A DNA stretch of 53,855 nucleotides, from the NCBI GenBank assembly GCA_044892505.1, contig CM097882.1:524716146-524770000 (forward strand), written 5' to 3'. Position numbers and translations under genes: made by a program. Each line of letters starts with the position of its first letter. Position 1 is the first letter of the stretch. The DNA comes from Schmidtea nova. Taxonomy: Eukaryota. Below, one piece after another: positions 11,830 to 45,689 of the stretch. Under the pieces are notes generated by a model that did no database searches, was not told the DNA's origin, and was given only the letters and a program-made list of their open reading frames with translations.

Positions 11830-11849
11830 TAACATTCTCACAATTTATT

Positions 11850-17373: not shown

Positions 17374-18651
17374 CGTGGTGCGTTCAATAAGTACCCGACC
17401 AAAGGTAAAAAATGTAATGACAAATTTTAGTTTTTTTGTGTAAATAAATAAATAAATATAGGTATTAATTTCAGTTATTGTTTTATTTTATCAAACGCAT
17501 TAAAATTTTTATTGTGACATTTTGAATTTTAGTCGGTGTAATGATTTCAGACGTTGAGTATCGCAGCGTTATCAAGTTCTTTGTGTTGCAGAAGAAGACG
17601 TGCAGTGAAATCTACGATCTTTTGCAGTCAACTTACCTACATGACTCCCCATCTCTGACAACTGTTAAATATTGGGTCAGAGAGTTTAAAGGTGGTCGCA
17701 CCTCCGTTTTTGATCAAGAAAAATCAGGTCGGCCACCAGAAATTTTTCACACAGTTGATGAAAAATTGGAGAAGATTGTCCAAGAAGAGCGTCGAATCAC
17801 CATGAAAATGCTGTCAACGAAGCTCAACATCAGTTTTGGTACAGCCCACGCAAAATTGAAATACATGGGTATCAGAAAACTGTGCTCCAGATTCGTACCC
17901 CACTTCTTGACTGGTGAAATGATGCGAAACCGCTTGGAGTGCAGTCAGAACAACTTGAACCTGTGGGACCAGCATGGTGAGACTTTACTGGCAAATTTAA
18001 TAACGGAGGATGAAACCCCACTCAGTATGTATTTGCCGGAAACAAAGAGTGAGTCAGCAGAGTGGAAACTGCCTGGAGAGAAGCCATCTTTGAAGATGCG
18101 AACGGGGACAAGTCATGGGCGAGCGATGATGCTTTCCATTTTCTGGGATCATAAAGGTGTTATTCTCATTTATTTCGCGGATAAAGGCATCACCATCAAC
18201 GCTGCCTATTACAGCAAAGAATAGACGGAAGCAGAAGAATACGCCACTATGGTTTCTCCACGACAATGCGCCAGTGCACACAGCGGGCGTTTCTCGGGCC
18301 ACAATTGAAGGTGCTGGACTAGTGCTTGTGGATCATCCGCCGTACAGCCCAGATTTGGCACCAAGCAATTTTTACCTCTTTAGACACCTAAAGAAGCATT
18401 TGAGAGGCACCCAGTTTGGATCCAAAGACGATTTGAAGGTTGCCGTGGAGGATTTCTTCAATGCATGTCCCCGAGATTTCTTCAAAAATGCGTTTTCTGA
18501 GTTTATTATTCGTTGGCGGAAGTGTGTGGAGCGAAATGGACATTATGTTGAAAAATAATGCCTACATACGTTAAGCTTGTTGCGTTATAAAAATGGCCCA
18601 TTTTGGAATTCGTTTTCTTCGTCAGGTCGGGTACTTATTGAACGCACCACG
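17374..18651 (+). mobile_element. Full-length mariner (1,278 bp) with perfect 27-bp TIRs
   Basis: CGTGGTGCGTTCAATAAGTACCCGACC at both ends in inverted orientation, TA flanks. Confidence 0.95.
17541..18558 (+). pseudogene. Mariner DD34D transposase, frameshifted near 18220 and with the third Asp changed to Asn
   Basis: TEDET, HDNA, 34 residues, then YSPDLAPSNF. ORF split into 17541-18224 and a second frame ending at 18558. Confidence 0.9.
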
Positions 18652-27435: not shown

Positions 27436-27536
27436 TTTTCTTGTGTGTTTCTAATTATTTTTGATTATTTGGTCAGCTCAGATATATTTTCTTGTGTGTT
27501 TCTAATTATTTTTGATTATTTGGTCAGCTCAGATAT
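27436..27536. repeat. Tandem duplication 2 x 51 bp
   Basis: TTTTCTTGTGTGTTTCTAATT..GGTCAGCTCAGATAT occurs twice. Confidence 0.85.
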
Positions 27537-28663
27537 TTGTTTATACTTCTTGCGTGGTCTCTACATATTATGTCCACTCTCGCTTCCAAATTAATGGGAT
27601 TCAGCTTTTGCCCAACAGTATGTTTGACTCAGAAATTTACTAAGTATTTTTCGTATGTCATTTATATAACTGGTTAATAAAAAAAATTTCATGACCTTCC
27701 TTTAGTAAAATTTGAAAAATTTTCCCAAAATTTTTCTTATTATAATTGGCAAGAATAAACTTTATTCCAATATCTTTTTTCGTGACCATCTTTTTGTAAA
27801 TTTTCAAAAATTTATCTTTGCACTTTTTTTTAATTTTAGCTTATACTTGATCGGAATTTTACTTATCGCTTTATGATTTATATTTATTTAACTTCACGTT
27901 AATATTTATGTTTTAAATCCCAATAAAAATTTATTGAAAATTTTGCCAAAGTTTGAATTAAGCATAAATCTTATTCCAATAAACAAACAATTACTGGCCT
28001 GACATGAATATCTCTGGTAACTAGAAAGTCGGTATCAAGTTTCTCCATGAAATCTCCACTAAGTCTGTACTCTATTTACTCTAGATACAAAAATGAGGAT
28101 GAAATCGATGGAAAGCACGGAAAAAATTACTTCCATTGAAATATTGAAATTGATAAATTTATTTTCGATTTTTCAAAATTTTGAAAATAAAACCGTCTAA
28201 TTGACAAAATTTCATCGATTGAAAAATATTTTAACTTTTTCTTGTTTTTTATGTTGTTTTTCAGAATTTTAAGAGTAATTACTTTTAGTGTTTTCCTCTT
28301 TCATCATTTCAATTTTTTTATTTTTTCCAGTTGGAGGTCTTGCAAAATAATAGCTTGTTTTGGTCGGAAAAAAGTTAAATAATTCTTTAGCAATATTATC
28401 AGAATGCCATTAAAACATTAAGATTATACGGCATTTTAATAATAGTTTTTTCTGCATAATAATTTTAGACTTGGGTTTCTCAAATTAGGTACGAGTAGGT
28501 AGATGTGAGTTCCATAAATCACTTTCAATTATACCCCCCAGTTTTCGACAAGTTTCGCGCGTTTGATTGATAATTTATCGAAATAGTATTCATTTTAAAG
28601 TGCAAATATATTTCAAAAAGTGCTATTATTGATTTTAAAGTGCTAAAAATTGCTAAGAAGTAG

Positions 28664-29789
28664 TGTTGGATGATGAAGGTAAGCCCATCAATACATTCCT
28701 CCTATCAGAAAATTATAGTGTGGGGGGCAACAAATACAGAGTGAACATTTATGCAGAGCCTGTCGATAAGACCAATATTCAAAAAGAAACAGAACCCAAT
28801 ATCAATCAGTACCCAGTGCACAATCAATCCAAGCACCAACCAGGATATCAACATCCATTTGATATTTGATTGACATTTGATATTTAATATTTGATCGACA
28901 TTTGATATTTAATATTTGATCGACATTTGATATTATTATTGGGAATGTTATTTCTTGTATATATTTCTAGTGTAAATATTTGACATTGGATATTATTATT
29001 TTAGTTGGGAATGCGATATATTAGTTTAGTTCTTTTAAATGTATAAAATTATTATTAATATTTATGTACTTTTTATTCTTTTAAATGTATATAATTTAAA
29101 AAATTATTATTAATATTTATGTACTTTTTAATGAAATATTTTATTATTTTAATTATACAGATATTAGAATCAACATAATTGTAGGAAATTATTTTAATTA
29201 TTTTGAAGCGGCAGCGAGTCAATATTAGAATCAACATAATTGTAGGAAATTATTTTAATTATTTTGAAGCGGCAGCGAGTCAACATTGTTCCAATAGCGA
29301 AATTATTTGAAATTATTTTAATTGTTGTAATTATTTCAACAACGAGTACGAAAAACTTTAGTATTTAAAGAAGGGAAAATTTCTAAAACTTGCCCACAAT
29401 TTTTGAAATTCAATTTCAATAAAATTTAGCGAAACAAACTTTCTCAAAGGGTAATCCTGAGAGAACTTAAAATATACGAACAGCACAAAAACGTTCAACA
29501 CGAAATTGTTATCGTTAAAATAAACATAATACATTCACTAAATAACAAGCACACAATAGGACACGCAAAAAATATCCTTTAAATAAAACAGTGTGAAAAT
29601 TTGAAAGCGTAATTGATAGTTTTTGATTTGAAAGTGTAATTGGTAACTTTTAGAGTAATTGAGAACTTTTGATTCTTAAATTTGGTAAATTTTATTATTG
29701 AATAAATTTTTCAAAAGACTTGATCTTATTTTTATATACGATAGTCTACACCAGTGCACGTTGAGATCTAAAAATCTTGGACCTCAACA
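28664..29789 (+). repeat. 5' LTR (1,126 bp)
   Basis: Direct repeat of 41513-42638. Internal 25-bp (28872-28934) and 2 x 61-bp (29161-29282) tandem repeats. Confidence 0.97.
29355..29425 (+). promoter_or_regulatory. Possible LTR TATA-like box and polyadenylation signal (U3/R region)
   Basis: TATTTAAA near 29362 and AATAAA near 29418; positional inference only. Confidence 0.3.
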
Positions 29790-29791
29790 TT

Positions 29792-29809
29792 TGGTGCCGC
29801 GAACCGGGA
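29792..29809 (+). promoter_or_regulatory. tRNA primer-binding site (best guess tRNA-Phe)
   Basis: TGGTGCCGCGAACCGGGA, 2 nt after the LTR. It begins with TGG (complement of CCA) and resembles invertebrate tRNA-Phe 3' ends. Confidence 0.8.
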
Positions 29810-30038
29810 CAATAAAATATCAGAATATCAATTGGGGGATAGGAATTGCGATCAGAGGGATATTGTAATATATATCGGGAAAATATATTTATCTAAATAT
29901 TATTGACCAAAACAGAAATTCAAAGATATACAAACATTTAAGGTTAACAATAACAAAATAGGTAAAAAGATAAAGAAAGTCATTATAGATAAGCCACCTG
30001 AAATATTGCACAAGTTGAGAAAAAAGATAATATACAAA

Positions 30039-33000
30039 ATGAGTAATAATAGTACAGGCAGCAGCAATAGTGGAAGTAACAGTAATACATACAACATAAG
30101 CAGCCATAATTTTATAAAAACATTACCAATAGAATCATATAAGGGAGACCCTGAAAAGTTCGACGACTTTTTTGCCGAAATCGCACAGTATGCAGAGGCT
30201 TGCGGATGGAAAACAAATGAATTAAAACAACGAATCCCATTATACTTAAAGGGATACGCATTACAGGCATACAATAATTTAGCATGTAAAGGCATTAATT
30301 ATCAAGAGTTAGTTACAAACCTTAGAAAAGAAATAGTAATAGATCGAGACTTACAAAAAATAAAATTTCAAAAATTTAGAAGTAGATACCAAGGAGCCAG
30401 AGAATCAGTAGGTGAATATATATACACGATAACAGAATTAGCAAAAAAGGCATTTGGTGCCGGAGATCACACTAGTAAATTAATTGAGGATCAGTTTTGG
30501 AACGGCATCCAAAAATACTTATACAAAGCATTAATTACAATTGAGTATGAAGACTTAAATGAGTTAGTTCAAAAGGCAAAACGCATTGAAGCAATACAAA
30601 GATATAGATTTAAACCAGAGGTAGATGCTGTAGAAGTTGAAAAACAACCCGAGGTAAAACCTGAGTTGAGAAATAAGGATGACAGTATTCCCTGGGAAGA
30701 AATGAAACAATTATACTTGAATTTTGTTAATAATAGAAGAAAATTTAGTCCTAATAGAAGCCAATCACCTGAAAACAGGGGAAGGTTTAATAGTCCAGGA
30801 AATAAAAATTTCGATAATAGAAATAGAAATAATTTTAAAGATAGCTATCAAAGAAACAATAATAGAGACAGTTTTAGAGACAATCGTTTTGATAGAGATA
30901 ATGATAGAGACAACAGAGATAATTTTAGAGATAGTCGTTCTGGTTATAACAGAAACAGTTACAGTGGATATAATAAAAATAATAGAGATAGTCGCTTCGA
31001 ATATAATAGAAGAGATAATAGATATAGAGATAATTCGAGAAATAGGCAAGATAGCCCAGTGAGGCGAAATACTTATAATAATGATGGTAGAGATAAAGTG
31101 AATTTTAATGGACAAATAAAATGTTATAATTGCCAAAAGTATGGCCACCTAGCAAAGGTATGTAATAAACCACGAGCAGATTCACCAATAAGAGTAAGAT
31201 TTAAAAATGAGCCTGAGATAAAACAAGTAAATAGTGCTGAGCTCGAATCAGCAAATAAAGAAATAAATATATTAAGAGAGGAACTAAAAGAATTTAAAAC
31301 TCAATATGGAAGACTTATTGAGAGAAAACTTGAAATGTCTATAAATGAATTTAGCACCTTTACAAATGAAGTAGATATTGATAATGATGAGTTAAAGGAA
31401 ATTAGAGAAGCAGATGAAATATTTCTTACAAAAGAAAATAGACAAAAAGAATTAATAGAGGAATTTAAAGAGGTATTGCATAAGCAACCGTTTGATGACA
31501 ATGAAACATTAAGAGTAATCAATAAAATACAGGTTAATGGGATTGATTTAGAGAGACTTAGAAATTTAATACCAATGATGGTAAAGAGACAAAATCTAAC
31601 GAGAGTATTTGAATTAGAAATAGAAATAAAGGAGATGCTGAAATGTTATGGAGAATATATAAGAAAAAATGAAAAATTGCATGAAACACTAAATGTAACG
31701 ATTGAATCAAATGATAATTATTTTTTTAGTATTAAACAAAAGATGCATCCTTGCACTAAAGTGAGCAAATTAAAACGAATGGTAAGAGCCAAATGGCCAG
31801 GAACCATAGGAGAGAAAGATGTAATAAAATTATATTTTAACGGAATAGAATTATTAAGTGATGAGTACTTAATCGATTATGGGATAAACCCAGTAAGTGA
31901 TAATATTGTGGTAGCCACAGTAGAAAAACAAATGATCAATGAAATAATGACGCCAGTACCGTCGGTTGAGTTGAGTATAAATGAAGAAAACGATTTTGAT
32001 AGATTATTTAGGCTATGGGATAAATCACCTAGCGAAACAAAGAAATCAGTAATGGATGAAGAAATTATATTTAAACCTATAGATGAAAAGTATAGTAACT
32101 TACAAGAAACAATAGAAAGAATAGCTGAGGAAGCAAAAACAAAAGATGCAGAAACATCAAAACGAGGTAGAGGAAGACCTCGAAAATCAGAAATAATAGA
32201 AAAATCGGAGAATAGGAAGACAGCAGAACGATTAAGAGAGATTGCAAATCAACATAAACATGAACAACCAGAGTATCAAGACGATAATAATGACGTAAAC
32301 AAAATAAAAGAAGTAATAAAAGCAATGAATATTAAGCTATTTCCAGAAACAAAGCCAACAGTACTTATTGAAAATATAACTGAAAGGATGATGTTAATTA
32401 AAAAGGATACTAAAGAACTAGCTACAGAGGAAGCAAATGAAAAAACAGTGTTAAAAATCATGTTTAATACAGGGATAGATAAAGATAAAATAATAACGGC
32501 CATGGCATACTTGGCCGCAAGATATAAAAAGCTCATAAAAGAAAATCCAAAAGAGCAATTAGAAAAAGTAGCAACAATGATGTTTAAAAGATTGAAAGTA
32601 GAGGCAATACCATGGATAAAAAAGAAAGGAGGATGGAAAGTATTATATGATAAAGATACGACGAATAAAGAGAGTGATACAGATGAGGTAATAAAACAAT
32701 TAATAAAGAAAGCAACAGTAAAACCAAAGACAGAGAGTAAATCGATAACCTCCATAGTAATAGTCATTATCACTTTGTTATTAGATTTAATCAAGGGAGG
32801 CAATGCAATGGTAGCATATGATTGTCAAAATCCAAAGTGGGGACAAAAATACTCACTGCTAGATGTTGAAAATTGCCCTGAAGCAAATCCAACTAAATTA
32901 ATCATGTCAGAGCCTCAAATATTCCATGTTTATCAAGAATCAGACTTTATTCATACAGAGGCCAAAGAGTGCATAGTAAAGTATCAGGAGGAAGCATATA

Positions 33001-36000
33001 TATGTCATGTTGGGGCAAGAACAGTGTTAAAACCTACGTGGACACCCGAAGCAGTAATATTGTCACCAATAGAGTGTGAAGATGCATTTAAAACAAAGAA
33101 AGTAAAATATAGCGGTCATAAAGGAATAGAATTAGAAGCAAGGATAGGGGCAAAAATGAGACAAGATGTAAATGTCGTGGGATGGACATCAAAAGGAGGA
33201 TATTGTGAAGGAGGAGAATATACAATATGGGGCGAAAAACTGAGTAATGTTGTAGTAAGGAGACACTACATGGTAGAACTGAGAAAGTTCAAAGCATCCT
33301 TCGACAGCAGCTCAAAGAAAATGATGATATACAAATTTTGTACATTAGAAGAATCTTATTGCGATACAGGAGAATCAATGCTAATATACAAAATAGATAA
33401 ATACGATTGTCAGTTAACAAAATTAAAATCATTAAAATTTAGGGAAATCAAAGGAAAACAGTTCACAGAAGTAGACTCAAAAAGGGTGAGAGATCAAAAA
33501 AGGAAAACAACAATTGTACAAGAAAAAGATACACCAACAATATATATGTCAGAATCTGAAAACGAAGCAATGAGGTTTGTTAGTAAAAGGAAAAGTGTAA
33601 AATGTGGTAAGGAAATAATACAAACTAATTATGAAGGGATATACATAAGCAAAGAGGAAGTCAAAGATGCAAAACAAAAAGTAAATAAATTCGACGTCAA
33701 ACTTGCATCATACTTCAACAATAAAATCGATTTTTTCTATCATAACCAACTAGTACAATTAGATAAAGTATATCAATCAACAATTATGAGCGATTGCAAA
33801 CTCAACAGAGAAATATTGAGGACAAAAATGGCAGTGGCGGTAACAAACCCAGATTTAATGGCACCAATAATCTTCTCAGAAGAAGGAACATTTGCAAGGA
33901 TAGTAGGAGAAGTGATACAGACATTTCAATGTAAACCTGTTAGTGTATCGTTAGCAACAAATAATCAGTGCACTAATGAATTACCGGTAATATATAAAGG
34001 AGAAAGGGTATACCTTCAACCAATTACTAGAATATTAACAGAAAAAACATATATACCGAGAAAAATAGAAAAATGCACTAACCTATTAGACCCATTATAC
34101 AAAATAAATGACGAAATGTGGATATCTATGTCAGATAGAAAAGAGGCAATGAAACCACTCAAATTAGAACTCATAGAGCTAGAAAAAAGATTAGAGTTTA
34201 AAGAAATCAACGATATGGACAGTAATGGTATATATACGAGAGAAGCTATAGAAAGTGCAAGAAAACACATGCTATTTCCAAACGAAAAAGAAAGAGTACT
34301 TTCAATAATGGTTAACAGAGTTATCGAAGGAAGTTACGGAGGAAATTACAACTTTGATGTGTTATTATCAAAAGAATACTTCAAAAAAGTAGCATATAAA
34401 GTACTATATAGCATATGGGGATACTTTGCAGTCCTTGGAAACATGTTTTCTACAATCTTAGGTATATATTATACGGTTGCATTACTAAAAATGATATGTT
34501 CTTCTCTAGTATCACTGAGACAGCTAAAACAAGTATTTGGAAATTCATATAAATTATTAGCATGTTTGTGCCCATTTATAGCTAAATATCTTATTACGGC
34601 GAAACACGACAAGGAAATACGTTTAATAAAAGTCCAAAGGAATGAAGAAAGGCAATTACTGGTAGATGATGAAAACGATGAGGAAATAATTAAAGCGCAT
34701 ATATCACATGAAGGAAATGTACCACAACAAGGACTATATGAGAACCAAAGAGAACAACTAAAAGAGCTACAAGAAAATATAGAAATCAAAATTCCTAGAG
34801 AAAACAAGAATTGTCACTGTGAACCTAAAAAGATATATGGTTGTTATAGCTTAGAAGTCGAAACAATGGAACGATTAGATGCAGCAAACGAAGCAAGACC
34901 AAGACTTAGAATAATTATAAACAATATAATCATAAATGCATTAGTAGATACAGGAGCAGCAACATCCTTAATTAGAGAAGATCAACTGACAGATGATCAA
35001 AAAAGAAATATTATGAGCACAACGGATAAAGTAGTATCGTTATCAGCACATCGTATTCCACTAAAGGGAGACATAGAACTAATAGTCGAAACACCAGAAC
35101 AGGTAATAAACCACATATTTAAAGTGGTGCAAGAATGTAATAGCATATGTATATTGGGAATCGATATACTCAACAAGTTAGAAAATTGCATTATAGATTT
35201 AACAGATAATACGATAAAGAGAAAAGCAATTAAACATAAATCCAAGTTCACAGAAGTTGTTGCATTAGAAGCATTTGAATTGGAATATGAATGCGATCAT
35301 ATAATTCCCTTAAAAGTTAACATCAAAAGTGAGGACACTTTTATTTTTGAGCCAGAAACGGCAATTATACAAAATCAGAATATAATGCTAACCAATGAAT
35401 GCGTAATTCCGAGAAAGGGAATAATACCATTGAGAATAGCAAATTATGAAAAAAGTAATGTTAAAATACACAAAGGTACGAAATTGGGAAAATTATTCAA
35501 AGGTGAATTAGAAAAAACGTACGAAGTCAGTGAAATAAGCGTGATGAATAATAACGGCAAGGGAGTAGTCGAACCTAGTAAGATAAATAATATAAAATCA
35601 TATGACAAAGTAAAAATTAATAATGAATACTTAACAATAACACAACAAGCACAACTACAAACATTGATAGATAAATATAGTGATGTTTTTGCAAAACACG
35701 AATTTGATCTAGGAGATACCGATATAATCAAACATGTAATAGATACAGGTAATGCGAGACCAATAAAACAAAGACCATACAGCGTACCATACAAGTTAAG
35801 AGAGGAAATAAAACGACAAATCAAAGAACTAAACGATGCAGGTGTAATAAAACAGAGTTTTTCACAGTGGGCATCACCCATTGTACCCGTTAAAAAGAAA
35901 GACGGAGAAATAAGAATGTGCATTGACTATCGTAAATTAAATGATGTAACAGTAAAAGACTCATACCCATTCCCAAAAGCACAAGAGCAATACGATAAAC

Positions 36001-39000
36001 TTAGGGATGCTAAGTATTTTTCAGTTATTGACGCAAATAAGGGATATGTGCAAATTCAAATGGAAGAAGGGGATGCGGAAAAAACAGCATTTGTTATCGA
36101 GGATGGTTTATATGAGTACACACGATTACCTTTCGGGTTAACTAACGCACCAGCTACATTTCAGCGCCTAATGAACACAATATTAGTAAATGTACAACAT
36201 TGCGCAGTTTACATGGATGATATACTAATATCATCAAAAACATTTGAGGAACACTTAAAAGATATAACAAATGTACTCGAGAGACTAAGAAAAGCAAAAA
36301 TTAAAATTAAACCAACTAAGTGTAAATGGGCAGAACCTTCGGCGTTATTTCTAGGGCATATAGTTACAGTAGAAGGGATAAAACCAAATCCAGAAAAAAT
36401 AGAAGTTGTAAAGAAATTCCCAATACCAAAAACAGTACAACAAGTACAAGGGTTTTTAGGTCTAACAGGGTACTATCGTAAATTCATACAAGATTATGCA
36501 AAGATAGCATCACCGATAATAGAACTAACAAAGGGAATTAGAACAAAAGGAGAATGCAAAAATGTGTTAATAGTACAAGAAATTAACAGCAAAGTTAACA
36601 AGATACAAAAGAAGTGGACAAAGGAACACCAAGAAGCATTCAATAAACTAAAAGAAAGATTGATAACAGCACCAGTGTTAAGATATCCAGATTTCGAAAA
36701 ACAGTTTATAGTAATGACGGATGCCAGCGGGAAAGCCGTAGGAGCAGTCTTAGGCCAAGAAGAAGAAAAAGGGAAAGATTACGTAATAGCATATGCCAGT
36801 AAAACATTAAAAGGAGCACAGCTGAGGTATTCAACAATAGAAAAAGAATGTTACGCAATAGTATTCGCCCTAAAACAATTCAAACCATACATATATGGGA
36901 CTGAAGTGATAATAAGAACTGACCATAAACCATTAGAAGGCTTATGGAAACATAAAGATACATCAAGTAGATTACTTAAATGGGCAATGAAAATACAAGA
37001 CATGCACCTAAAAATTATATATAAACCAGGTAGAATAAATAAAAACGCAGATGCACTATCAAGAATACCAGAATTAGGAGCACTTGAAATATTTGCACTA
37101 GTAGCAGAAAAACCAATCGATATATATGAGGAACAGATGAAAGACCCAGAGATCAGTAAAGTAAAAAATGAAATCAGAAAAGAAAACAATTCAAAGTATA
37201 AAATATCAAAGAAATTAGTAGTAATAGAAGATTTCAATGGTAAGCAACTAATAGTAGTACCTCAGAAATTAAGACAAATACTCCTACTACAATATCACGA
37301 TGGAGCATTAGGAGGTCACTTATCATCTAGAAAGACAGCAAGTAGATTATTACAAAAATATTACTGGGAAGAATTAAAGAAAGATGTTAAGAGATGGTGT
37401 AACGCGTGTACAATATGTGCAACAAGAAAAAATACAGGTACAAAAACAAAAGCGCCGTTACATCCCATTCCAGCAACGACATCACCAATGGAACTATGTG
37501 CAATGGATTTTCTATGTAAATTACCTACTACAATTAATGGGAATAAACATATACTAGTATTTAGTGATTATTTTACTAGATGGGCAGAAGCATTTCCAAC
37601 AAAAGACGAAACAGCAGAAACAGTTGCTAAATTGCTTATAGAAAAAATTATTTTCAAGATAGGCACACCCAAAAGATTATTAACAGATAAAGGAACAAAT
37701 TTTACTAGTGAATTAATAAAACGAGTAGCTAATATTTTTAACATGCAAAAGATCAACACAACAGCGTATCACCCTCAAACGGATGGACTAGTAGAAAGAT
37801 TTAATGGGACATTACTAAGCAGACTAGCTGTTTTTGTAGGAAAAAATCAAAATGATTGGGACGAATACATAAGTCAATGCACATACATTCATAATATCAC
37901 TCCAAACGAAACAACAGGGAATTCACCGTATTATTTAATGTTTTTAAGAGAACCAGCAACACCAATAGATACAATATTTGAACCTCGAGTATCACAATAT
38001 TTAGATGCACCAGATTATGTCACATTAATGCAGGAAAAACTGCAAGAAGTGTATAAAGTAGCCAATCTAAAAGTCAAATATAGACAAGAACAGTACAAAG
38101 CCGACTACGACAAAAATAGTAAACCACACAACTTTAAAGTAGGTGATAAGGTTAGACTTATGTCACCACAAGTAGGAAAGGGAAAGACAACAAAACTAGC
38201 AAGACCATATAAAGGTCCATATGAGGTAGTAAAAGTAATAAATGAGAATTTACATTTACAAAAGCATAAAAACGAGGATCCAATAGTAGTACATGTCAAC
38301 AGATGCAAGTTGGCGGAAGCCGAGGTCACGATAGATAAACCTCACAAGTATAATCTAAGATCTCATAACAAACTAATAATATCGGCTATCTTCTTAACAA
38401 TCATAACAATTGTTGGCTCAACCGAAACAATAGAATTTGACAAAGTATTAATAAAAATATCAACAAACGAAGTTAGAGCATTTATCATAAATAGAGGAGT
38501 AATTGATTTATACATGCAAACAACGAATGGGAAAAACCCAAAGATGATAAAAGGAAAAGACGACAGAACAACCAACGAAATCGAAAGAGGAAACTATATT
38601 AATTTCACAAAACTAACACCTAATACAATATACAAAATCTGCATACAGAGAAACACAGATACAACAACATGGAGATGCAAAAAAATAAAAACAGAACAAT
38701 TACCCAAGAATATAACAAAAAACCATAACATAACAAAAACACTCGATAGAATAAAAAGCACAACAACGACATCAGATAATATACTAAATACCACACCACA
38801 TACAAACGAAATAACAACAAGCACTGGAATAGCCAAATTCCAAAAACAATACAATGCCAAAAAACAAAAACAAGAACCTATCAAAATAAGGCAAGGAAGA
38901 CCAATAGTGATACATAACTTAGAGGAACTACAAGCATTTCGTAAAGAGGATAAAAAGCCACATTGGCCTTATTATGTCATCACAACATCAATAATATCAT

Positions 39001-39155
39001 TAGTAGTTTTAGCTTTAATAACTAGCGTACAAATTTATAAAAAGTACAAGTGGAAAAGGCAGCGGTATCGGAGCCGACTGGTCAGAAATGTACCAGGGCA
39101 TTTCCATTTGGGCAAATATATACCAGGTGAATATACAAAATCCACATTGGTATAA
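30039..39155 (+). CDS. Single Gag-accessory-Env-Pol-FN3 polyprotein (open from 30006; first ATG at 30039)
   Basis: More than 9 kb uninterrupted ORF; domains are listed separately. Confidence 0.95.
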   Translation: MSNNSTGSSNSGSNSNTYNISSHNFIKTLPIESYKGDPEKFDDFFAEIAQYAEACGWKTNELKQRIPLYLKGYALQAYNNLACKGINYQELVTNLRKEIVIDRDLQKIKFQKFRSRYQGARESVGEYIYTITELAKKAFGAGDHTSKLIEDQFWNGIQKYLYKALITIEYEDLNELVQKAKRIEAIQRYRFKPEVDAVEVEKQPEVKPELRNKDDSIPWEEMKQLYLNFVNNRRKFSPNRSQSPENRGRFNSPGNKNFDNRNRNNFKDSYQRNNNRDSFRDNRFDRDNDRDNRDNFRDSRSGYNRNSYSGYNKNNRDSRFEYNRRDNRYRDNSRNRQDSPVRRNTYNNDGRDKVNFNGQIKCYNCQKYGHLAKVCNKPRADSPIRVRFKNEPEIKQVNSAELESANKEINILREELKEFKTQYGRLIERKLEMSINEFSTFTNEVDIDNDELKEIREADEIFLTKENRQKELIEEFKEVLHKQPFDDNETLRVINKIQVNGIDLERLRNLIPMMVKRQNLTRVFELEIEIKEMLKCYGEYIRKNEKLHETLNVTIESNDNYFFSIKQKMHPCTKVSKLKRMVRAKWPGTIGEKDVIKLYFNGIELLSDEYLIDYGINPVSDNIVVATVEKQMINEIMTPVPSVELSINEENDFDRLFRLWDKSPSETKKSVMDEEIIFKPIDEKYSNLQETIERIAEEAKTKDAETSKRGRGRPRKSEIIEKSENRKTAERLREIANQHKHEQPEYQDDNNDVNKIKEVIKAMNIKLFPETKPTVLIENITERMMLIKKDTKELATEEANEKTVLKIMFNTGIDKDKIITAMAYLAARYKKLIKENPKEQLEKVATMMFKRLKVEAIPWIKKKGGWKVLYDKDTTNKESDTDEVIKQLIKKATVKPKTESKSITSIVIVIITLLLDLIKGGNAMVAYDCQNPKWGQKYSLLDVENCPEANPTKLIMSEPQIFHVYQESDFIHTEAKECIVKYQEEAYICHVGARTVLKPTWTPEAVILSPIECEDAFKTKKVKYSGHKGIELEARIGAKMRQDVNVVGWTSKGGYCEGGEYTIWGEKLSNVVVRRHYMVELRKFKASFDSSSKKMMIYKFCTLEESYCDTGESMLIYKIDKYDCQLTKLKSLKFREIKGKQFTEVDSKRVRDQKRKTTIVQEKDTPTIYMSESENEAMRFVSKRKSVKCGKEIIQTNYEGIYISKEEVKDAKQKVNKFDVKLASYFNNKIDFFYHNQLVQLDKVYQSTIMSDCKLNREILRTKMAVAVTNPDLMAPIIFSEEGTFARIVGEVIQTFQCKPVSVSLATNNQCTNELPVIYKGERVYLQPITRILTEKTYIPRKIEKCTNLLDPLYKINDEMWISMSDRKEAMKPLKLELIELEKRLEFKEINDMDSNGIYTREAIESARKHMLFPNEKERVLSIMVNRVIEGSYGGNYNFDVLLSKEYFKKVAYKVLYSIWGYFAVLGNMFSTILGIYYTVALLKMICSSLVSLRQLKQVFGNSYKLLACLCPFIAKYLITAKHDKEIRLIKVQRNEERQLLVDDENDEEIIKAHISHEGNVPQQGLYENQREQLKELQENIEIKIPRENKNCHCEPKKIYGCYSLEVETMERLDAANEARPRLRIIINNIIINALVDTGAATSLIREDQLTDDQKRNIMSTTDKVVSLSAHRIPLKGDIELIVETPEQVINHIFKVVQECNSICILGIDILNKLENCIIDLTDNTIKRKAIKHKSKFTEVVALEAFELEYECDHIIPLKVNIKSEDTFIFEPETAIIQNQNIMLTNECVIPRKGIIPLRIANYEKSNVKIHKGTKLGKLFKGELEKTYEVSEISVMNNNGKGVVEPSKINNIKSYDKVKINNEYLTITQQAQLQTLIDKYSDVFAKHEFDLGDTDIIKHVIDTGNARPIKQRPYSVPYKLREEIKRQIKELNDAGVIKQSFSQWASPIVPVKKKDGEIRMCIDYRKLNDVTVKDSYPFPKAQEQYDKLRDAKYFSVIDANKGYVQIQMEEGDAEKTAFVIEDGLYEYTRLPFGLTNAPATFQRLMNTILVNVQHCAVYMDDILISSKTFEEHLKDITNVLERLRKAKIKIKPTKCKWAEPSALFLGHIVTVEGIKPNPEKIEVVKKFPIPKTVQQVQGFLGLTGYYRKFIQDYAKIASPIIELTKGIRTKGECKNVLIVQEINSKVNKIQKKWTKEHQEAFNKLKERLITAPVLRYPDFEKQFIVMTDASGKAVGAVLGQEEEKGKDYVIAYASKTLKGAQLRYSTIEKECYAIVFALKQFKPYIYGTEVIIRTDHKPLEGLWKHKDTSSRLLKWAMKIQDMHLKIIYKPGRINKNADALSRIPELGALEIFALVAEKPIDIYEEQMKDPEISKVKNEIRKENNSKYKISKKLVVIEDFNGKQLIVVPQKLRQILLLQYHDGALGGHLSSRKTASRLLQKYYWEELKKDVKRWCNACTICATRKNTGTKTKAPLHPIPATTSPMELCAMDFLCKLPTTINGNKHILVFSDYFTRWAEAFPTKDETAETVAKLLIEKIIFKIGTPKRLLTDKGTNFTSELIKRVANIFNMQKINTTAYHPQTDGLVERFNGTLLSRLAVFVGKNQNDWDEYISQCTYIHNITPNETTGNSPYYLMFLREPATPIDTIFEPRVSQYLDAPDYVTLMQEKLQEVYKVANLKVKYRQEQYKADYDKNSKPHNFKVGDKVRLMSPQVGKGKTTKLARPYKGPYEVVKVINENLHLQKHKNEDPIVVHVNRCKLAEAEVTIDKPHKYNLRSHNKLIISAIFLTIITIVGSTETIEFDKVLIKISTNEVRAFIINRGVIDLYMQTTNGKNPKMIKGKDDRTTNEIERGNYINFTKLTPNTIYKICIQRNTDTTTWRCKKIKTEQLPKNITKNHNITKTLDRIKSTTTTSDNILNTTPHTNEITTSTGIAKFQKQYNAKKQKQEPIKIRQGRPIVIHNLEELQAFRKEDKKPHWPYYVITTSIISLVVLALITSVQIYKKYKWKRQRYRSRLVRNVPGHFHLGKYIPGEYTKSTLV
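30129..31163 (+). other. Gag: capsid-like region, R/D/N-rich linker and CCHC zinc knuckle
   Basis: IESYKGDPEKFDDFF..LYLKGYALQAY..QGARESVGEY (retrotransposon gag pattern); CYNCQKYGHLAKVC at 31122-31163. Confidence 0.9.
31689..31925 (+). other. Ubiquitin-like domain within the polyprotein
   Basis: TKVSKLKRMV..IKLYFNGIELLSDEYLIDYGI aligns with ubiquitin [30 protein letters not shown]. Confidence 0.7.
32160..32186 (+). other. AT-hook motif
   Basis: KRGRGRPRK. Confidence 0.75.
32290..32650 (+). other. Bcl-2-like domain
   Basis: BH1-like MFNTGIDKDKIITAMAY (compare LFRDGVNWGRIVAFF) and BH2-like IPWIKKKGGWKVLY (compare TWIQDNGGWDAFVELY) at Bcl-2-like spacing, followed by a hydrophobic tail. Confidence 0.6.
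32742..34600 (+). other. Internal signal peptide plus chuvirus-like envelope/fusion glycoprotein with C-terminal TM
   Basis: SITSIVIVIITLLLDLIKGGNA/MVAYDC..YSLLDVENC, 14 ectodomain Cys, LPVIYKGERVYLQPITRIL, GIYTREAIE, and hydrophobic segments at 34400-34590. Confidence 0.8.
34900..35210 (+). other. Retropepsin aspartic protease
   Basis: INALVDTGAATSLI and ICILGIDIL. Confidence 0.92.
35680..37075 (+). other. Reverse transcriptase and RNase H
   Basis: LPFGLTNAPATFQR and YMDD (36210-36221); RNase H TDASGKAVGAVL, EKECYAIV and TDHKPL. Confidence 0.97.
37290..38320 (+). other. Integrase (HHCC, DD35E, GPY/F)
   Basis: YHDGALGGH..CNACTIC, AMDF, TDKGTNF, GLVERFN and YKGPYEV. Confidence 0.96.
38365..39155 (+). 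other. C-terminal type I membrane protein: signal peptide, FN3-like domain, Thr-rich stalk, TM, basic tail
   Basis: LIISAIFLTIITIVGS; KLTPNTIYKICIQ (FN3 LxPxTxY motif); sequons NFT, NIT x2 and NTT; TM WPYYVITTSIISLVVLALITSVQIY; tail KKYKWKRQRYRSR. Confidence 0.7.
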
Positions 39156-39618
39156 TACGTTTTGGTCAATAATAATAATTAAAATCATATATATTCGTAT
39201 TTATATAGCGTATAAGGTTAAACCGACAATACGCCTTAAACAAAAAACTTTATCCTTTATTTTTAGAAAAGATTGCACGAGCAAAACAAAGCAAGTTCTA
39301 ACAAACTCCGAAAACCCAATCAATCTCGTGAATTCTACACACCAATCAAATCATTGCGACAACCATTCAAAAATCTCAAGAAATACAATCATCTCTTTTT
39401 TAAACTATCACAACAAACAATCAAAAAACCCTACTAATCATCTCCATACAAAATACCCAATCAATCTCGTCAATTCTATAAACCAATCGAATCGTTACGA
39501 CAATTACCCATATATCTCAATATATTCAATTATATCTCTGTTAAACTGTCAAAATCCTAGTAATCATCTCTCAAATCAATATCTCAAGAAATCAATTCAA
39601 TACCAATCAAAAACAAAG

Positions 39619-41718
39619 ATGAATCAAAATCAACCTCATTTCAATCACTCAAGAACCTACCAGAAATACACTTGTTTTATAAACAAACTCAACATGAGTT
39701 TTTACAAAAATCTACAGAACAAGATATGTACGGATGGAACCCCAATTACAATTCGCAGTTTCCCAAATCAAATATGCATCCCAAATGACATGAAAGTCGA
39801 AATAGAAGAACGGGAAATGCATCTGATAAAATTCAATGAGGCCCGAAGAGTGAAACTCAGAGAGCTTATTGGAACCTTCGACAAATACCAAAACGTCGAC
39901 AAAGAAGTTGCAGAAAACAAGAGAATCCCTCACAGACTAATATTCCACATGACAAAAACAGAAGTTGCAATAAGTCAAAATAAAATCCCGTTAATTGTCA
40001 CAAGCAACTGTTCAGCAGTTATCAAGTTAATAAGAAAAGACAGAAGCATGTCAAACGATTTCAATGAGCTGACAGTGCAGATGAACAACCTACCATGTGT
40101 GATAGCAATCGAAGTGCTATATATCCCGACAATCCCAAATCCGTTCATAAAATTAAACCCAATACATTCAATCCTACAAATAAATGAAGATATGATCAAT
40201 CAGAAGATATCATTCACGAATCAAGAGTTAACGACAGAAGAAAGGCATTCATTAACTGTAATGGTGGATATAAAAGTAGTACAAGATATAAACAAAAATC
40301 TCAGACCAGTGGAAATTTGTATCAGAAGCAGAAAAGGAGCAATTCTGTATAACAAATTCATCACCCCAAGAACGAAAGTAGAAAAATTCTACACGGAAAA
40401 AACTAAAGCTACAAAAGAAAACATAATTGGAAATGAAGACGAATATAAAGCCTTAAATGAAATTCGAAACATTCTCTATGGAAAGATCATAATTGGATTC
40501 AACATCATAGATAAGTTAAAACTATTGACGATAGATCTGGACAACATTATGGGCATAAGAGAAATGGCACAGGATCGATTCATGTGTTCTTTTGTAAAAA
40601 ACGTGGCCCCACCAAAAATAAAAATATCAAATTTGGCTTACCAGGTAATCAACTACCATAAAAGTTAACATAAAGATAAAAAGTTAAATGATATATTGAG
40701 ACAACCAGAACCATTCTCAACAAAGATCACCACAATGCTATTAAAAGTTATCTACGATATCACAGAAAATAAATGGGAAGAAGTTGTCAAATGGGATTCC
40801 GCAACACTTCTTAAAAAGAAACAAGTAAATGGAGAAGAACAACTAGAAACAATATTCGAAAACGAAACAGAGAGCGAAGCAGAAGGTGAGATAGAAAGTG
40901 AATATGAAGATGGAGAAGGCATGGAGCCGTCCCATAGAGAATCAACAAAAACCAATCATTACAAACCAAAAAAGTCATTCATGGAAGAGCTCATGGACAG
41001 TGACGACGATGAACTCATGATCATAAAAGAAGAAATACCACTTATCGCCCCAACTAGAGAAATCAAAGCAGAACCAAAAATTCAAAATATTCTATATGAA
41101 AGAATGGACGAATGTGACATAGATGATGAATATTTCTCAGCAGATGAAAACATAGAAGAACCTTCAACCAGCAGTAACGACATCAAAATGGAAGAAGATA
41201 GTGAAGAACCATCAACAAGTAATAAATACAACATAATGGAAGAGGATATCGGACCAGAACCAAACGTTGAAATGTTAGCCGACTGGACAGAACCAGAAGA
41301 ATTAGACTTCATAATAGACAAAGACAAAAAGTATGTCTCAGAAAAAGATCTCTGCACTCATTTTGGAAGACAAATTGAGCACGAGGAGACGATAAACCTT
41401 GCGATAAAAAATGGATTTCGAAAAACAACAATTCAAATAAAAGAGAAAAGAATTGATTTAATATTGTGTGACAAGGGTAATGAGGACATTACTTTGACGG
41501 CCCGGGGAGGAATGTTGGATGATGAAGGTAAGCCCATCAATACATTCCTCCTATCAGAAAATTATAGTGTGGGGGGCAACAAATACAGAGTGAACATTTA
41601 TGCAGAGCCTGTCGATAAGACCAATATTCAAAAAGAAACAGAACCCAATATCAATCAGTACCCAGTGCACAATCAATCCAAGCACCAACCAGGATATCAA
41701 CATCCATTTGATATTTGA
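39619..41718 (+). CDS. Accessory ORF2: unknown N-terminal domain, DEDDh (ISG20/REX4-like) pseudo-exonuclease, acidic region; one in-frame TAA at 40666-40668
   Basis: ORFs 39088-40668 and 40696-41718 are in the same frame. VMVDIKVV..PVEICIRSRKGAILYNKFITP..EIRNILYGKIIIGFNI follows the ISG20/REX4 pattern. Start codon uncertain (39619 or 39694). Confidence 0.6.
41504..41512 (+). promoter_or_regulatory. Polypurine tract
   Basis: GGGGAGGAA immediately before the 3' LTR TG. Confidence 0.85.
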
Positions 41719-42638
41719 TTGACATTTGATATTTAATATTTGATCGACATTTGATATTTAATATTTGATCGACATTTGATATTATTATTGGGAATGTTAT
41801 TTCTTGTATATATTTCTAGTGTAAATATTTGACATTGGATATTATTATTTTAGTTGGGAATGCGATATATTAGTTTAGTTCTTTTAAATGTATAAAATTA
41901 TTATTAATATTTATGTACTTTTTATTCTTTTAAATGTATATAATTTAAAAAATTATTATTAATATTTATGTACTTTTTAATGAAATATTTTATTATTTTA
42001 ATTATACAGATATTAGAATCAACATAATTGTAGGAAATTATTTTAATTATTTTGAAGCGGCAGCGAGTCAATATTAGAATCAACATAATTGTAGGAAATT
42101 ATTTTAATTATTTTGAAGCGGCAGCGAGTCAACATTGTTCCAATAGCGAAATTATTTGAAATTATTTTAATTGTTGTAATTATTTCAACAACGAGTACGA
42201 AAAACTTTAGTATTTAAAGAAGGGAAAATTTCTAAAACTTGCCCACAATTTTTGAAATTCAATTTCAATAAAATTTAGCGAAACAAACTTTCTCAAAGGG
42301 TAATCCTGAGAGAACTTAAAATATACGAACAGCACAAAAACGTTCAACACGAAATTGTTATCGTTAAAATAAACATAATACATTCACTAAATAACAAGCA
42401 CACAATAGGACACGCAAAAAATATCCTTTAAATAAAACAGTGTGAAAATTTGAAAGCGTAATTGATAGTTTTTGATTTGAAAGTGTAATTGGTAACTTTT
42501 AGAGTAATTGAGAACTTTTGATTCTTAAATTTGGTAAATTTTATTATTGAATAAATTTTTCAAAAGACTTGATCTTATTTTTATATACGATAGTCTACAC
42601 CAGTGCACGTTGAGATCTAAAAATCTTGGACCTCAACA
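41513..42638 (+). repeat. 3' LTR (1,126 bp)
   Basis: Direct repeat of the 5' LTR; no mismatch noticed by eye. Confidence 0.97.
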
Positions 42639-42644
42639 GTAGCA

Positions 42645-43262: not shown

Positions 43263-45689
43263 AATCCATATTGCCATATGGCAACGCTAAGAAGTTATAC
43301 TGCTATTAGGATGTCAATTGTTAACATGATTGAAGTTATTGCAGTTTCTCCAATAATTCCACAATATCAGCAAAAATAATAAAAAGGCCATGAAAATTAG
43401 ATTTTAGCAATTTATTATGGAAATAAATTTTATTGTGATTTATGAGAATCTTCCAAACAATCGATACAAATACCAATTTTACATTTTTTACACATTGTTC
43501 TCATTATGGATTTACAGTTTTTGCCAGCATCGTCATTTTTTGTTATCCGGTATTTTTCCTACGAAAAATGATCTCTTCCATCTGATCTTACTTCTTCTGA
43601 TATCATTTTCATGATGGAGCTTTTCGGGGATAAAGATCTCCCTGCACCTTTTACCGCTTTTCCATATTGGCAAAGTTAAGTTAGTACAATTTCTCTTCGA
43701 AATCAAAATAGTGGAATTTCAAAACTTCCAAATTTCTGTTTAGGCATCCATGCATTATGAATGCATATATTTATTAGCCATGAAAAAAAGAGGTCAATAC
43801 CATATTTATTGCGTTTGTTTATACGATTTTTGGCAACATTTTCTTCCATTCTATCGATTCCACCCATGTATTTATTATATTCCCCCATACCTTATGGTCG
43901 TAACACTCCGATAATGTTTTATGTGCTAGAGAGTATCTTTTGACGGTCAAAAGTTGCGCAACGCTATTGCAATTCGAAACAATTGAGACATTATAATTAT
44001 CTACCCATTTCACAACAACTACTGCATCGTCTTTACAAATTGTATACTGATAAACTCCTCTATCATTCCTTTTAAATTCTTTATTTGAAGGTAGAATATT
44101 ATTTTTGAGAATTCTGTTCTCTCTTATTGTTTCCGTTGCGTGGTGTATTCGTTTTTTTGAATAACATAATAAATTCAGGTTGGTAAATAAATTATCAAAA
44201 TATAAATGATAGGGCAATGACTGCTTGTTATTGGGCAAAGAATTCAGCATCGTGAGTAAAGAAGTAACAGTTTTCCTAAAACTTTTTAAGTATCTATCGT
44301 TTGAAAATAAATTTCGAAATCCACAAGATATCCATTTACAGTGTTTAAACACCATACTTTATAGGCTAACCTAATCGGTTGTCCATGAATGTATTGCTTG
44401 CATCCGTGTTTACCGAAATACTTCACAATTTATTCGTAAAATGACAAATTCTTTTCGGGAATATAGTGTTTGTGAATGTTCGTTTTTACCATATTCCCCA
44501 AAGGTCGTAATTTTCCCATTTTGTCGCATTTATTTGGATTGGAGTGATCGCAAAAATGAAAAAAAGTCTTAAAATCTGTTCAAATCGATTTCTCCGCATA
44601 CTTCATTACTAGCTCATTGCCAATATCGTTATTCTTATCCCAATAAATTCTCTTTCCTGACAATTTATCATTAACGCTGAGAATCAATATTGTCACGAAA
44701 ATTTTAATTTCTTTGGAAGTTATTGCAGGATCTACACAATTATAAAATTGCGCGTATTCGTTTGAAGAACTCGTTAAAAAATAAATAATTTCTTCACTGA
44801 GAATTAATTCAAAGATATTTGAATAAGATGTGCTTGTAAAATCATGAACATGGACTGTAAAATTATCTTACACTGTAGCTTCAAATTGTTCTTCGATCCA
44901 TGCCCTTTCTTCATTTTCCTTCTAGGCAAATTCTTTTTCTATTCGATGAGTCCTTACAGCTTTTGCTTCTGATAACAACTGTATCCCATTCGAATTATCA
45001 TACTCACGCTCAACTTCATCTCCCAGAATCTTCATCCATAAGAACGGCTACCTCGAGTGGAGATAAAAAAACTGCCTTTATTGGTTTGTCGAAGTTTTCA
45101 TTTCTTTCCTCGTTTTCTGAAATCATGTCTAATGCTTTTATGGCAGTAAATCCATCCGCAAATCGAATACCCATGCTTCTAAAATAAAATTTTTTTACAA
45201 TATAAAATTGAATGGTCATAATAAATGATCCTAAATCTAAATAATATGTAATGATGGCGAAGTAATATTATTCTTTCGTTTTAGAAATAGCGTTGGGAAT
45301 AATTTAGCGTTGCCATTGGCAACACAAAGAATTCCGTCATGTTTCCTAAAAAAGTATAGTGGAGAGTAAAACTAATAACATTCATTTATAGTATGAAGGA
45401 TATAGAATATAATACTTAAGAATAAATTATTATTATTATTATTGCGAAATATGAGAAATAGTTACTTACCTCGCGTAATCATACATATCGCCGTCCATCA
45501 TAAAAAACACTAAAATAAACTAACTATTATTTCTCACAAAACTTCATTCGAACACATTTAACTGATTGTTACATCTCGACTGAGATTTATGTACATGCAA
45601 ACACTTCCCGGCACGATTTGCTTAAACAAAAAAGTGCAAAGTTGCAAATGACGATTCAATGCGCTATGATACCAAATGACAACAATTGG
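43263..45689 (-). mobile_element. Degenerate piggyBac (PGBD3-like) transposon; ends approximate
   Basis: Minus-strand YHLYFDNLFTN, TIRENR, VVVKWVDNYNV and YNKYMGGIDRM. Inverted TTGCCATATGGCAACGCTAA motifs at 43271 and 45304. TTAA at 45690. Confidence 0.75.

What the first reader, a model, noticed from the sequence alone, without database searches (positions are those of the whole stretch)
28664..42638. Intact retrovirus-like Ty3/gypsy element carrying a host-manipulation and entry cassette built into Gag-Pol
Seen in the sequence: complete cis-elements (LTRs, TSD, PBS, PPT) and one 3,049-aa ORF with Gag, Ubl, AT-hook, Bcl-2-like, glycoprotein, PR, RT, RH, IN and an FN3 membrane protein, plus a 3' ORF with an exonuclease-like fold. 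Established: Ty3/gypsy elements normally encode only Gag and Pol, and env-bearing ones (errantiviruses) usually carry env as a separate ORF after pol. Inference: this is an enveloped, potentially infectious retroelement that has gained large-DNA-virus-style accessory functions (cell-death control, ubiquitin mimicry, surface protein, RNA-sensing decoy). I do not know of a described element with this combination.
Basis: partly seen in the sequence, partly recalled or inferred. Interest (0 to 1): 0.93.

Follow-up and report, generated by a model that had tools for sequence, protein, structure and literature searches.

The report
Compact Burro-like enveloped gypsy retroelement
This is a real, very recently inserted retrovirus-like element whose single giant gene carries a viral entry protein and cell-death and ubiquitin-like modules between its capsid and enzyme parts. 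That unusual design was already described for the "Burro" elements of planarian flatworms, so this is a new member of a known kind.

Summary
Window 28664-42638 is a complete LTR element. Its two 1126-bp LTRs are identical and end TG..CA, it has a GTAG target duplication, a PBS and a PPT, and one uninterrupted 3049-codon ORF.

Tools support these ORF1 domains, in order:
- Gag with a CCHC knuckle
- a ubiquitin-like domain
- an AT-hook
- a Bcl-2-like domain (BH1-BH2)
- a full chuvirus-type class III fusion glycoprotein, with a leader and a TM anchor
- PR, RT, RH and IN
- a C-terminal membrane module (FN3 fold only suggested)

A 3' gene resembles the exonuclease ISG20. It carries one in-frame stop.

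The novelty claim fails. Arkhipova & Yushenova 2019 (PMC6431247) describe planarian Burro/GYPSM1 elements with Gag, Ubi2/SUMO-like, BCL-2, an in-frame mononegavirus-like env, then PR-RT-RH-IN in one ORF.

Here, at least 13 database polyproteins share this order. On Pol, all glycoprotein-bearing ones form one clade with this element.

Two features are absent from the passages of that description I read and recur in relatives: a membrane module after integrase (11 of 13) and the exonuclease-like 3' gene (three other loci, two element types).

The host was not identified. About 29% GC fits a planarian.

Verdict: new member of a known kind, moderate interest.

The parts
28660..28663 (+). Target-site duplication GTAG (left)
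28664..29789 (+). 5' LTR, 1126 bp, TG..CA ends, internal 25-, 46-, 61- and 27-bp tandem repeats
   Evidence: 0 mismatches to the 3' LTR
29792..29809 (+). Primer-binding-site-like 18-mer starting TGG, two bases after the LTR
   Evidence: the cognate tRNA was not identified (no tRNA in the window)
30006..39155 (+). ORF1, a single uninterrupted polyprotein frame (first ATG at 30039; 3038 aa from the ATG)
   Evidence: GC3 uniform at 0.18-0.28 across all segments
30039..31205 (+). Gag: capsid-like N-terminal part, an N/R/D-rich stretch, one CCHC knuckle (31122-31163)
   Evidence: The N-terminal part is homologous to the Gag of 29 relatives
31692..31955 (+). Ubiquitin-like domain (codons about 563-650); no C-terminal di-glycine
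   Evidence: An iterated local HMM finds it upstream of G in 9 relatives. Profile A5 against PDB hits FAT10 at 3e-4, ISG15 at 2.5e-3 and ubiquitin at 3.6e-3. Relative P0008 hits Pfam ubiquitin at E 4e-5
32160..32198 (+). AT-hook (RGRP core)
   Evidence: (E 0.049); also present in relative L009 (alignment)
32343..32660 (+). Bcl-2-like helical domain (BH1-BH2 region, invariant GGW)
   Evidence: Pfam Bcl-2 at E 6.7e-7, 30.2 bits against cut-off 31.4. Profile A3 against PDB hits Bcl-xL at 7e-5. It lies directly upstream of G in 4 relatives. The model is all-helical, pLDDT 64-75
32745..32804 (+). Internal hydrophobic leader directly before the mature glycoprotein
   Evidence: all 13 of 13 relatives have one at the same place
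32757..34694 (+). Chuvirus-type class III fusion glycoprotein (ectodomain codons about 935-1467; TM anchor at 34407-34511)
   Evidence: PF24664 at E 6e-88. There are 1168 relatives. Model pLDDT is 90-97. Herpesvirus gB at E 7e-14. Chu-like virus G at E 3e-43. All 14 ectodomain Cys are conserved
34890..35183 (+). Aspartic protease (DTG)
35889..36365 (+). Reverse transcriptase (YMDD)
36615..37001 (+). RNase H
37257..38309 (+). Integrase (H2C2 zinc domain, core, SH3-like C-terminal part)
38346..39152 (+). Membrane module after integrase: hydrophobic leader, 7-strand beta region, T-rich linker, TM helix, short tail
   Evidence: The FN3-like fold is suggested only. There is no sequence homologue, but 11 of 13 relatives have two or more hydrophobic stretches after IN
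39694..41718 (+). 3' accessory gene with an ISG20/RNase T-like (DEDDh-family) region. It is one frame interrupted by one in-frame stop, has an acidic repeat-bearing C-terminal part and ends inside the 3' LTR. The frame is also open upstream from 39088, overlapping the ORF1 end, with no homology there
41504..41512 (+). Polypurine tract GGGGAGGAA
41513..42638 (+). 3' LTR
42639..42642 (+). Target-site duplication GTAG (right)

Best explanation
The region is a full-length, very young Ty3/gypsy (Metaviridae) LTR retroelement. It belongs to the clade whose published representatives are the planarian Burro/GYPSM1 elements.

Shown: one 9.1-kb frame encodes, in order:
- Gag
- a ubiquitin-like domain
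- an AT-hook
- a Bcl-2-like domain
- a complete chuvirus-type class III fusion glycoprotein, with its own hydrophobic leader and TM anchor
- PR, RT, RH and IN
- a second leader-ectodomain-TM module

An ISG20-like gene follows. It carries one in-frame stop.

Inferred mechanism: the frame is translated as one polytopic polyprotein at the ER.
- The four hydrophobic stretches alternate. Gag-Ubl-Bcl-2 and PR-RT-RH-IN therefore stay cytosolic, while the two ectodomains face the lumen.
- Signal peptidase and the element's protease separate the parts.
- The leader left behind would tail-anchor the Bcl-2-like product.
- Gag would then bud through membrane carrying the fusogen, allowing cell-to-cell spread.
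- The Bcl-2-like and ubiquitin-like modules would delay host-cell death or adjust turnover.
- The role of the exonuclease-like gene is open. This copy does not keep all catalytic positions.
For: - Cis elements and an intact frame.
- Glycoprotein identity and fold, with all 14 ectodomain cysteines conserved in 55-58 of 55-58 aligned rows.
- Bcl-2-like and ubiquitin-like domains at profile level.
- The same order gag..G..PR..RT..RH..IN in one protein in at least 13 database relatives.
- All 12 glycoprotein-bearing relatives plus this element form one Pol clade of 16 among 104 sequences.
- A leader before G in 13 of 13 relatives, a TM after G in 11 of 13, and a membrane module after IN in 11 of 13.
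- Uniform GC3 across segments.
- The 3' gene is homologous to downstream ORFs of three loci, which represent two element types, L006/L011 and L007. One of them hits Pfam RNase_T.
- The published Burro architecture (PMC6431247), and BURRO1 described as abundant, active and piRNA-controlled (PMC8532177).
Against: - No transcript, protein or particle data exist, so the polytopic-polyprotein route and any spread between cells are inference only.
- The host is unidentified, and no Burro reference sequence could be compared.
- Burro features are absent here: dUTPase, MATH, BIR, ankyrin, and a size above 30 kb.
- The Bcl-2 Pfam score is just under the curated cut-off, and only BH1-BH2 is matched.
- The tail fold is low confidence.
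- The glycoprotein ectodomain has no N-x-S/T sequon.
- The 3' gene carries a stop and lacks some catalytic positions that a relative keeps.
Confidence: 0.75

Rival explanations
1. It is a purely intracellular retrotransposon, and the glycoprotein and accessory modules are passenger or decaying sequence with no role in the element's cycle.
For: There is no expression or particle evidence. The ectodomain has zero N-glycosylation sequons. The 3' gene has a stop and degenerate motifs. The tail has no homologue.
Against: The 9.1-kb frame is intact. All 14 disulfide cysteines are kept. G is retained at 27-40% identity across a whole Pol clade, with leader and anchor in place. That pattern needs long purifying selection.
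Confidence: 0.1
2. The same element, but the envelope protein is made from a spliced subgenomic RNA, as in retroviruses. The in-frame arrangement is then not used for translation of one polyprotein.
For: This is the usual retroviral and errantiviral way. Nothing here tests splicing. Some relatives have gag or G in separate ORFs (L004, L008 and L010).
Against: In-frame continuity without a stop is kept in many diverged relatives. The count of hydrophobic stretches is even, which keeps the enzymes cytosolic. Neither would be needed if the parts were translated apart.
Confidence: 0.2
3. It is an assembly chimera, or a nested insertion of an endogenous RNA-virus glycoprotein into an ordinary gypsy element.
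For: Glycoprotein-only endogenous viral elements are common (PMC7642597).
Against: The order and frame are the same in at least 13 independent contigs from ENA, JGI and Logan. GC3 is uniform. There are no internal LTRs or repeats flanking G.
Confidence: 0.02
4. It is an undescribed kind of element.
For: The AT-hook, the membrane module after IN and the ISG20-like gene are absent from the Burro passages I read. In the Pol tree, the 13 other sequences of the 14-member inner clade form its sister group.
Against: The defining combination (Gag, Ubl, BCL-2, in-frame mononegavirus-type env, Pol in one ORF) is published.
Confidence: 0.05

Closest known systems
Burro / GYPSM1 giant gypsy-like LTR elements of planarians (Jurka 2007; Grohme 2018; Arkhipova & Yushenova 2019, PMC6431247)
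   Same: One giant ORF. Gag with CCHC at the N-terminus. A ubiquitin/SUMO-like domain, then BCL-2-like, then env with mononegavirus glycoprotein similarity in frame before PR-RT-RH-IN. Extra 3' ORFs. An AT-rich host genome.
   Different: 14 kb against more than 30 kb, and a 3049-codon ORF1 against 4873-5140 aa. One CCHC knuckle against 2-3. No MATH, BIR, ankyrin, Smc or dUTPase was found here. The AT-hook, the membrane module after IN and the ISG20-like gene do not appear in the passages I read. No direct sequence comparison was possible.
Anakin: BEL/Pao elements with a captured chuvirus glycoprotein in mosquitoes (Dezordi 2020, PMC7642597)
   Same: An LTR retroelement that captured a Jingchuvirales-type glycoprotein. 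Young copies with near-identical LTRs.
   Different: The Pol superfamily differs (BEL/Pao, not Ty3/gypsy). The text I searched does not describe env in frame between gag and pol, or Bcl-2 or Ubl modules.
Errantiviruses and env-carrying Ty3/gypsy of metazoans (Chary & Hayashi 2026, PMC13524379)
   Same: Ty3/gypsy Pol plus a viral fusogen. The gB-type env of that survey is also class III.
   Different: That survey's env classes are F-type and HSV gB-type. Env in gypsy-like elements is otherwise expressed as a separate ORF (PMC6431247). Here env is chuvirus-type and embedded between Gag and PR.
Bdelloid rotifer Vesta/Juno elements with an exonuclease ORF3 (Rodriguez 2017, PMC5408684)
   Same: An LTR element carrying a 3' gene of the DEDD exonuclease superfamily.
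   Different: Those are DEDDy (RNase D/WRN-like). This one resembles DEDDh ISG20/RNase T, and in this copy it is probably not catalytic.

Membership tests
Ty3/gypsy (Metaviridae) LTR retroelement | LTRs with TG..CA ends, a 4-6 bp target duplication, a PBS and a PPT | tested here: met
Ty3/gypsy (Metaviridae) LTR retroelement | Pol order PR-RT-RH-IN with gypsy-type RT_RNaseH and Integrase_H2C2, and Pol nested among gypsy Pol sequences | tested here: met
   No BEL/Pao or copia families were hit
Burro/GYPSM1-like clade | A single giant ORF with env in frame between gag and pol | tested here: met
   description in PMC6431247
Burro/GYPSM1-like clade | A ubiquitin/SUMO-like domain followed by a BCL-2-like domain upstream of env | tested here: met
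Burro/GYPSM1-like clade | Env similar to mononegavirus fusion glycoproteins | tested here: met
Burro/GYPSM1-like clade | dUTPase between PR and RT; MATH_TRAF_C, BIR, ankyrin and Smc motifs; total length above 30 kb | tested here: not met
   There are no such Pfam hits, and the element is 13,975 bp. Relatives P0008 and L004 do carry ankyrin repeats. I treat these as variable cargo, not as core features
Burro/GYPSM1-like clade | Sequence relatedness to Burro reference entries; a planarian host | not testable with these tools
The window's proteins are not in the collection. Window GC of about 29% matches the more than 70% A/T reported for S. mediterranea (PMC11410931)
Class III viral fusion glycoprotein | A gB / rhabdovirus-G-like ectodomain fold, with a leader and a C-terminal TM anchor | tested here: met
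   Trimer state, fusion loops and activity were not tested
Bcl-2 family | BH1-BH2 helical core | tested here: met
   alignment A3 has an invariant GGW
Bcl-2 family | A complete eight-helix bundle with a BH3-binding groove | tested here: inconclusive
   The model is helical but only at pLDDT 64-75. Foldseek output was taken up by the glycoprotein hits
DEDDh exonuclease (ISG20/RNase T) | Exo I, II and III motifs with the catalytic D, E, D, H and D | tested here: inconclusive
   Homology to ISG20 at E 4.6e-5. A relative hits RNase_T and keeps all the motifs, but this copy does not keep all of them and has one in-frame stop
Fibronectin type III domain (tail) | A seven-strand beta sandwich | tested here: inconclusive
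   The model has pLDDT 49 and seven strands. The top Foldseek hits are FN3 but at E 0.015-0.07. There is no Pfam or PDB sequence hit
Errantivirus (insect gypsy with F-type env) | Env as a separate ORF after pol, of baculovirus-F type | tested here: not met

The most novel reading that the evidence does not exclude
The clade may be a lineage of enveloped reverse-transcribing viruses of invertebrates that express everything from one polytopic polyprotein. On this reading it has two conserved membrane modules: the class III fusogen before PR, and a fast-evolving second surface protein after integrase. It would also have a recurrent ISG20-like gene. The last two traits were not in the Burro text I read. 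This copy would be a compact, early-branching and currently active member.
Probability: 0.3. Interest if true: 0.65.

Novelty: new member of a known kind. Interest (0 to 1): 0.45.

Why it matters
It gives a small, fully intact example (14 kb, identical LTRs) of a little-studied design in which a retroelement carries its entry protein and host-control modules inside Gag-Pol.

The survey shows the design is a clade-wide trait found in several public assemblies, not an oddity of one genome.

It also points to two recurrent parts worth describing: the membrane module after integrase and the exonuclease-like 3' gene. Both bear on how retrotransposons turn into viruses and how RNA-virus glycoproteins are reused.

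Tried and rejected
- Long proteins matching the Ubl-to-G region by word search: none found. That was a sensitivity limit; the Pol-region search and full HMMER found them.
- PDB sequence search with the glycoprotein alone: nothing.
- Exact look-ups of the window's proteins and of the 3' ORF: not in the collections, so the host stayed unidentified.
- tRNA and Rfam scans of the window: nothing.
- Other copies or solo LTRs in the window: none.
- LTR-PBS junction in IMG/VR: no match.
- LTR pairs in relatives' contigs: none, as the contigs are partial.
- Sample accessions in the literature: no hits.
- Grohme 2018: not held in the library.
- Pfam on relatives' tails: nothing useful.
I dropped it and did not resend that stretch to any tool.
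- dUTPase, MATH, BIR and ankyrin were looked for in this element and not found.
- The second DTG, at codon 1913, lies in the conserved RT N-terminal stretch and is not a second protease.
- No contig was taken to be human.

Full report
**1. Observation**

The element is real and sits at the stated coordinates.
- Offset comparison shows two 1126-bp direct repeats, at 28664-29789 and 41513-42638, with no mismatch and TG..CA ends.
- GTAG flanks both sides.
- A TGG-initiated 18-mer lies two bases after the 5' LTR.
- GGGGAGGAA abuts the 3' LTR.
- ORF1 (30006-39155) has 3049 codons without a stop. Its first ATG is at 30039.
- No other copy or solo LTR is in the window.
- The flanks hold hAT, mariner and piggyBac-like fragments.
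- Window GC is 0.18-0.37, about 0.29 overall.

**2. Domains of ORF1**

Pfam gives zf-CCHC, RVP, RVT_1, RT_RNaseH(_2), Integrase_H2C2 and rve. It also gives Monjiviricetes_fusion PF24664 over the whole profile, between Gag and PR, at E 6e-88. The catalytic motifs are present.

*Glycoprotein.*
- Full HMMER against 1.84 billion representatives finds 1168 relatives.
- The closest, at 27-40% identity, lie inside long proteins.
- Free-standing glycoproteins of about 650 aa follow at 22-28% identity. One sits in a genuine N..G-L mononegavirus contig.
- With a 59-row alignment, AlphaFold2 models the ectodomain at pLDDT 90-97.
- Foldseek matches herpesvirus gB at E 7e-14 and chu-like, chuvirus, xinmovirus and qin-related virus glycoproteins at E 3e-43 to 1e-31.
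- All 14 ectodomain cysteines are cysteine in 55-58 of 55-58 aligned rows.

*Bcl-2-like.*
- Pfam scores 30.2 bits against a cut-off of 31.4.
- A five-sequence family profile hits Bcl-xL at E 7e-5 over BH1-BH2, and 121 PDB sequences match at E up to 1.
- GGW is invariant in the alignment.

*Ubiquitin-like.*
- A five-sequence profile hits FAT10, ISG15 and ubiquitin at E 3e-4 to 4e-3. Nearly all top hits have the ubiquitin fold.
- Relative P0008 hits Pfam ubiquitin at the same place.

*AT-hook.* It has an RGRP core, weakly supported by Pfam and shared with one relative.

*Tail after integrase.*
- It has a hydrophobic leader, seven predicted strands, a T-rich linker and a TM helix.
- The model is poor (pLDDT 49), and the FN3 hits reach only E 0.015.

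**3. 3' region**

- The frame from 39694 aligns end to end with downstream ORFs of two relatives' loci. A further locus, L011, carries the same gene.
- It matches ISG20 (PDB 1wlj) at E 4.6e-5.
- One relative's ORF hits Pfam RNase_T and keeps the DEDDh motif set.
- This copy does not keep all catalytic positions.
- The gene is interrupted once by an in-frame stop. I cannot tell whether that is native.
- Its acidic, repeat-bearing end runs into the 3' LTR.

**4. Relatives**

- I searched the Pol region among proteins of 1.7-5.3 kaa. The best matches, at 41-44% identity and 99% coverage, are giant polyproteins that also carry PF24664. They are P0005, P0006, P0008, P0010-P0012, P0014-P0016 and others, from ENA, JGI and Logan assemblies.
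- Local mapping shows the order gag..G..PR..RT..RH..IN in one protein.
- The ubiquitin-like segment lies upstream of G in 9 relatives. The Bcl-2-like segment lies directly upstream of G in 4.
- In a neighbour-joining tree of RT to IN (104 sequences, 787 columns), all 12 glycoprotein-bearing relatives and this element form one clade of 16. The other three members are short gene calls. This fits one capture in one gypsy lineage.
- A hydrophobic leader precedes G in 13 of 13 relatives, and a TM follows G in 11 of 13.
- In 11 of 13, two or more hydrophobic stretches follow integrase, although those tails barely align. The membrane module after IN is therefore an architectural trait of the clade.

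**5. Mechanism**

The domain set, the intact frame and the four alternating hydrophobic stretches are shown. The following steps are inferred:
- ER-bound translation of one polytopic polyprotein, with the enzymes and Gag in the cytosol and both ectodomains in the lumen.
- Cleavage by signal peptidase and by the element's protease.
- Tail-anchoring of the Bcl-2-like product by the retained leader.
- Budding with the fusogen.

A spliced env mRNA remains possible.

**6. Comparison with known elements**

Arkhipova & Yushenova 2019 (PMC6431247) describe Burro/GYPSM1 of Schmidtea mediterranea and Dugesia tigrina. These have one ORF of 4873-5140 aa: Gag with CCHC knuckles, Ubi2/SUMO-like, BCL-2, env with hits to mononegavirus fusion glycoproteins in frame before PR, then dUTPase, RT, RH and IN, plus accessory ORFs. 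BURRO1 is reported as abundant, active and piRNA-controlled (PMC8532177). The core design is therefore known.

This element differs in these ways:
- It is compact, at 14 kb.
- It lacks dUTPase, MATH, BIR and ankyrin.
- It has an AT-hook.

The membrane module after IN and the ISG20-like gene are not in the passages I read.

Other env-carrying retroelements differ:
- The Ty3/gypsy survey of Chary & Hayashi classes env as F-type or gB-type.
- Chuvirus glycoproteins were linked to BEL/Pao elements in mosquitoes.

**7. Verdict**

- The novelty claim is not supported. This is a new member of a known kind.
- The host is not identified. A planarian is an inference from base composition and from the only published precedent.

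Noticed in passing
P0024 (database protein, 2524 aa): A chromodomain-bearing gypsy polyprotein carries a rhabdovirus glycoprotein fusion domain (PF00974, E 7.5e-6) after integrase and the chromodomain in the same protein. This looks like a separate glycoprotein capture in another gypsy lineage.
   Followed up: partly
window 32808-34406 (G ectodomain): There is no N-x-S/T sequon in 531 residues, against about 2.7 expected from composition. Element-borne relatives have 0-2, and free viral glycoproteins have a median of 3. The depletion is weak and its meaning is unclear.
   Followed up: partly
window 7900-9759 (+), 11239-11841 (-), 17541-18558 (+), 43819-44355 (-): The neighbourhood holds hAT-like, mariner-like (HTH_48, Transposase_1, DDE_3) and piggyBac-like ORFs. 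No host gene was recognised in the window.
   Followed up: partly
window 39311-39554: Two copies of a 103-nt unit at 79% identity, 141 nt apart, lie in the stretch between the ORF1 end and the homology start of the 3' gene.
   Followed up: no
L004 17034-24564: A relative's contig continues into genes with bacterial-type Pfam hits (Bac_luciferase, NAD_binding, MnhB). This may be a chimeric metagenome contig or foreign genes next to the element.
   Followed up: no
L004, L008, L010 (all ENA ERZ25039515): One assembly holds at least three diverged members of the clade. Some have gag, G or Pol in separate ORFs and carry extra protease-like and ankyrin modules.
   Followed up: partly
L006 and L011: The same element type (identical tblastn identities to the window's segments) turns up in an ENA and a JGI metagenome assembly, both at about 29% GC.
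   Followed up: partly
window 27433-27534: There are two tandem copies of a 51-nt unit just upstream of the element.
   Followed up: no
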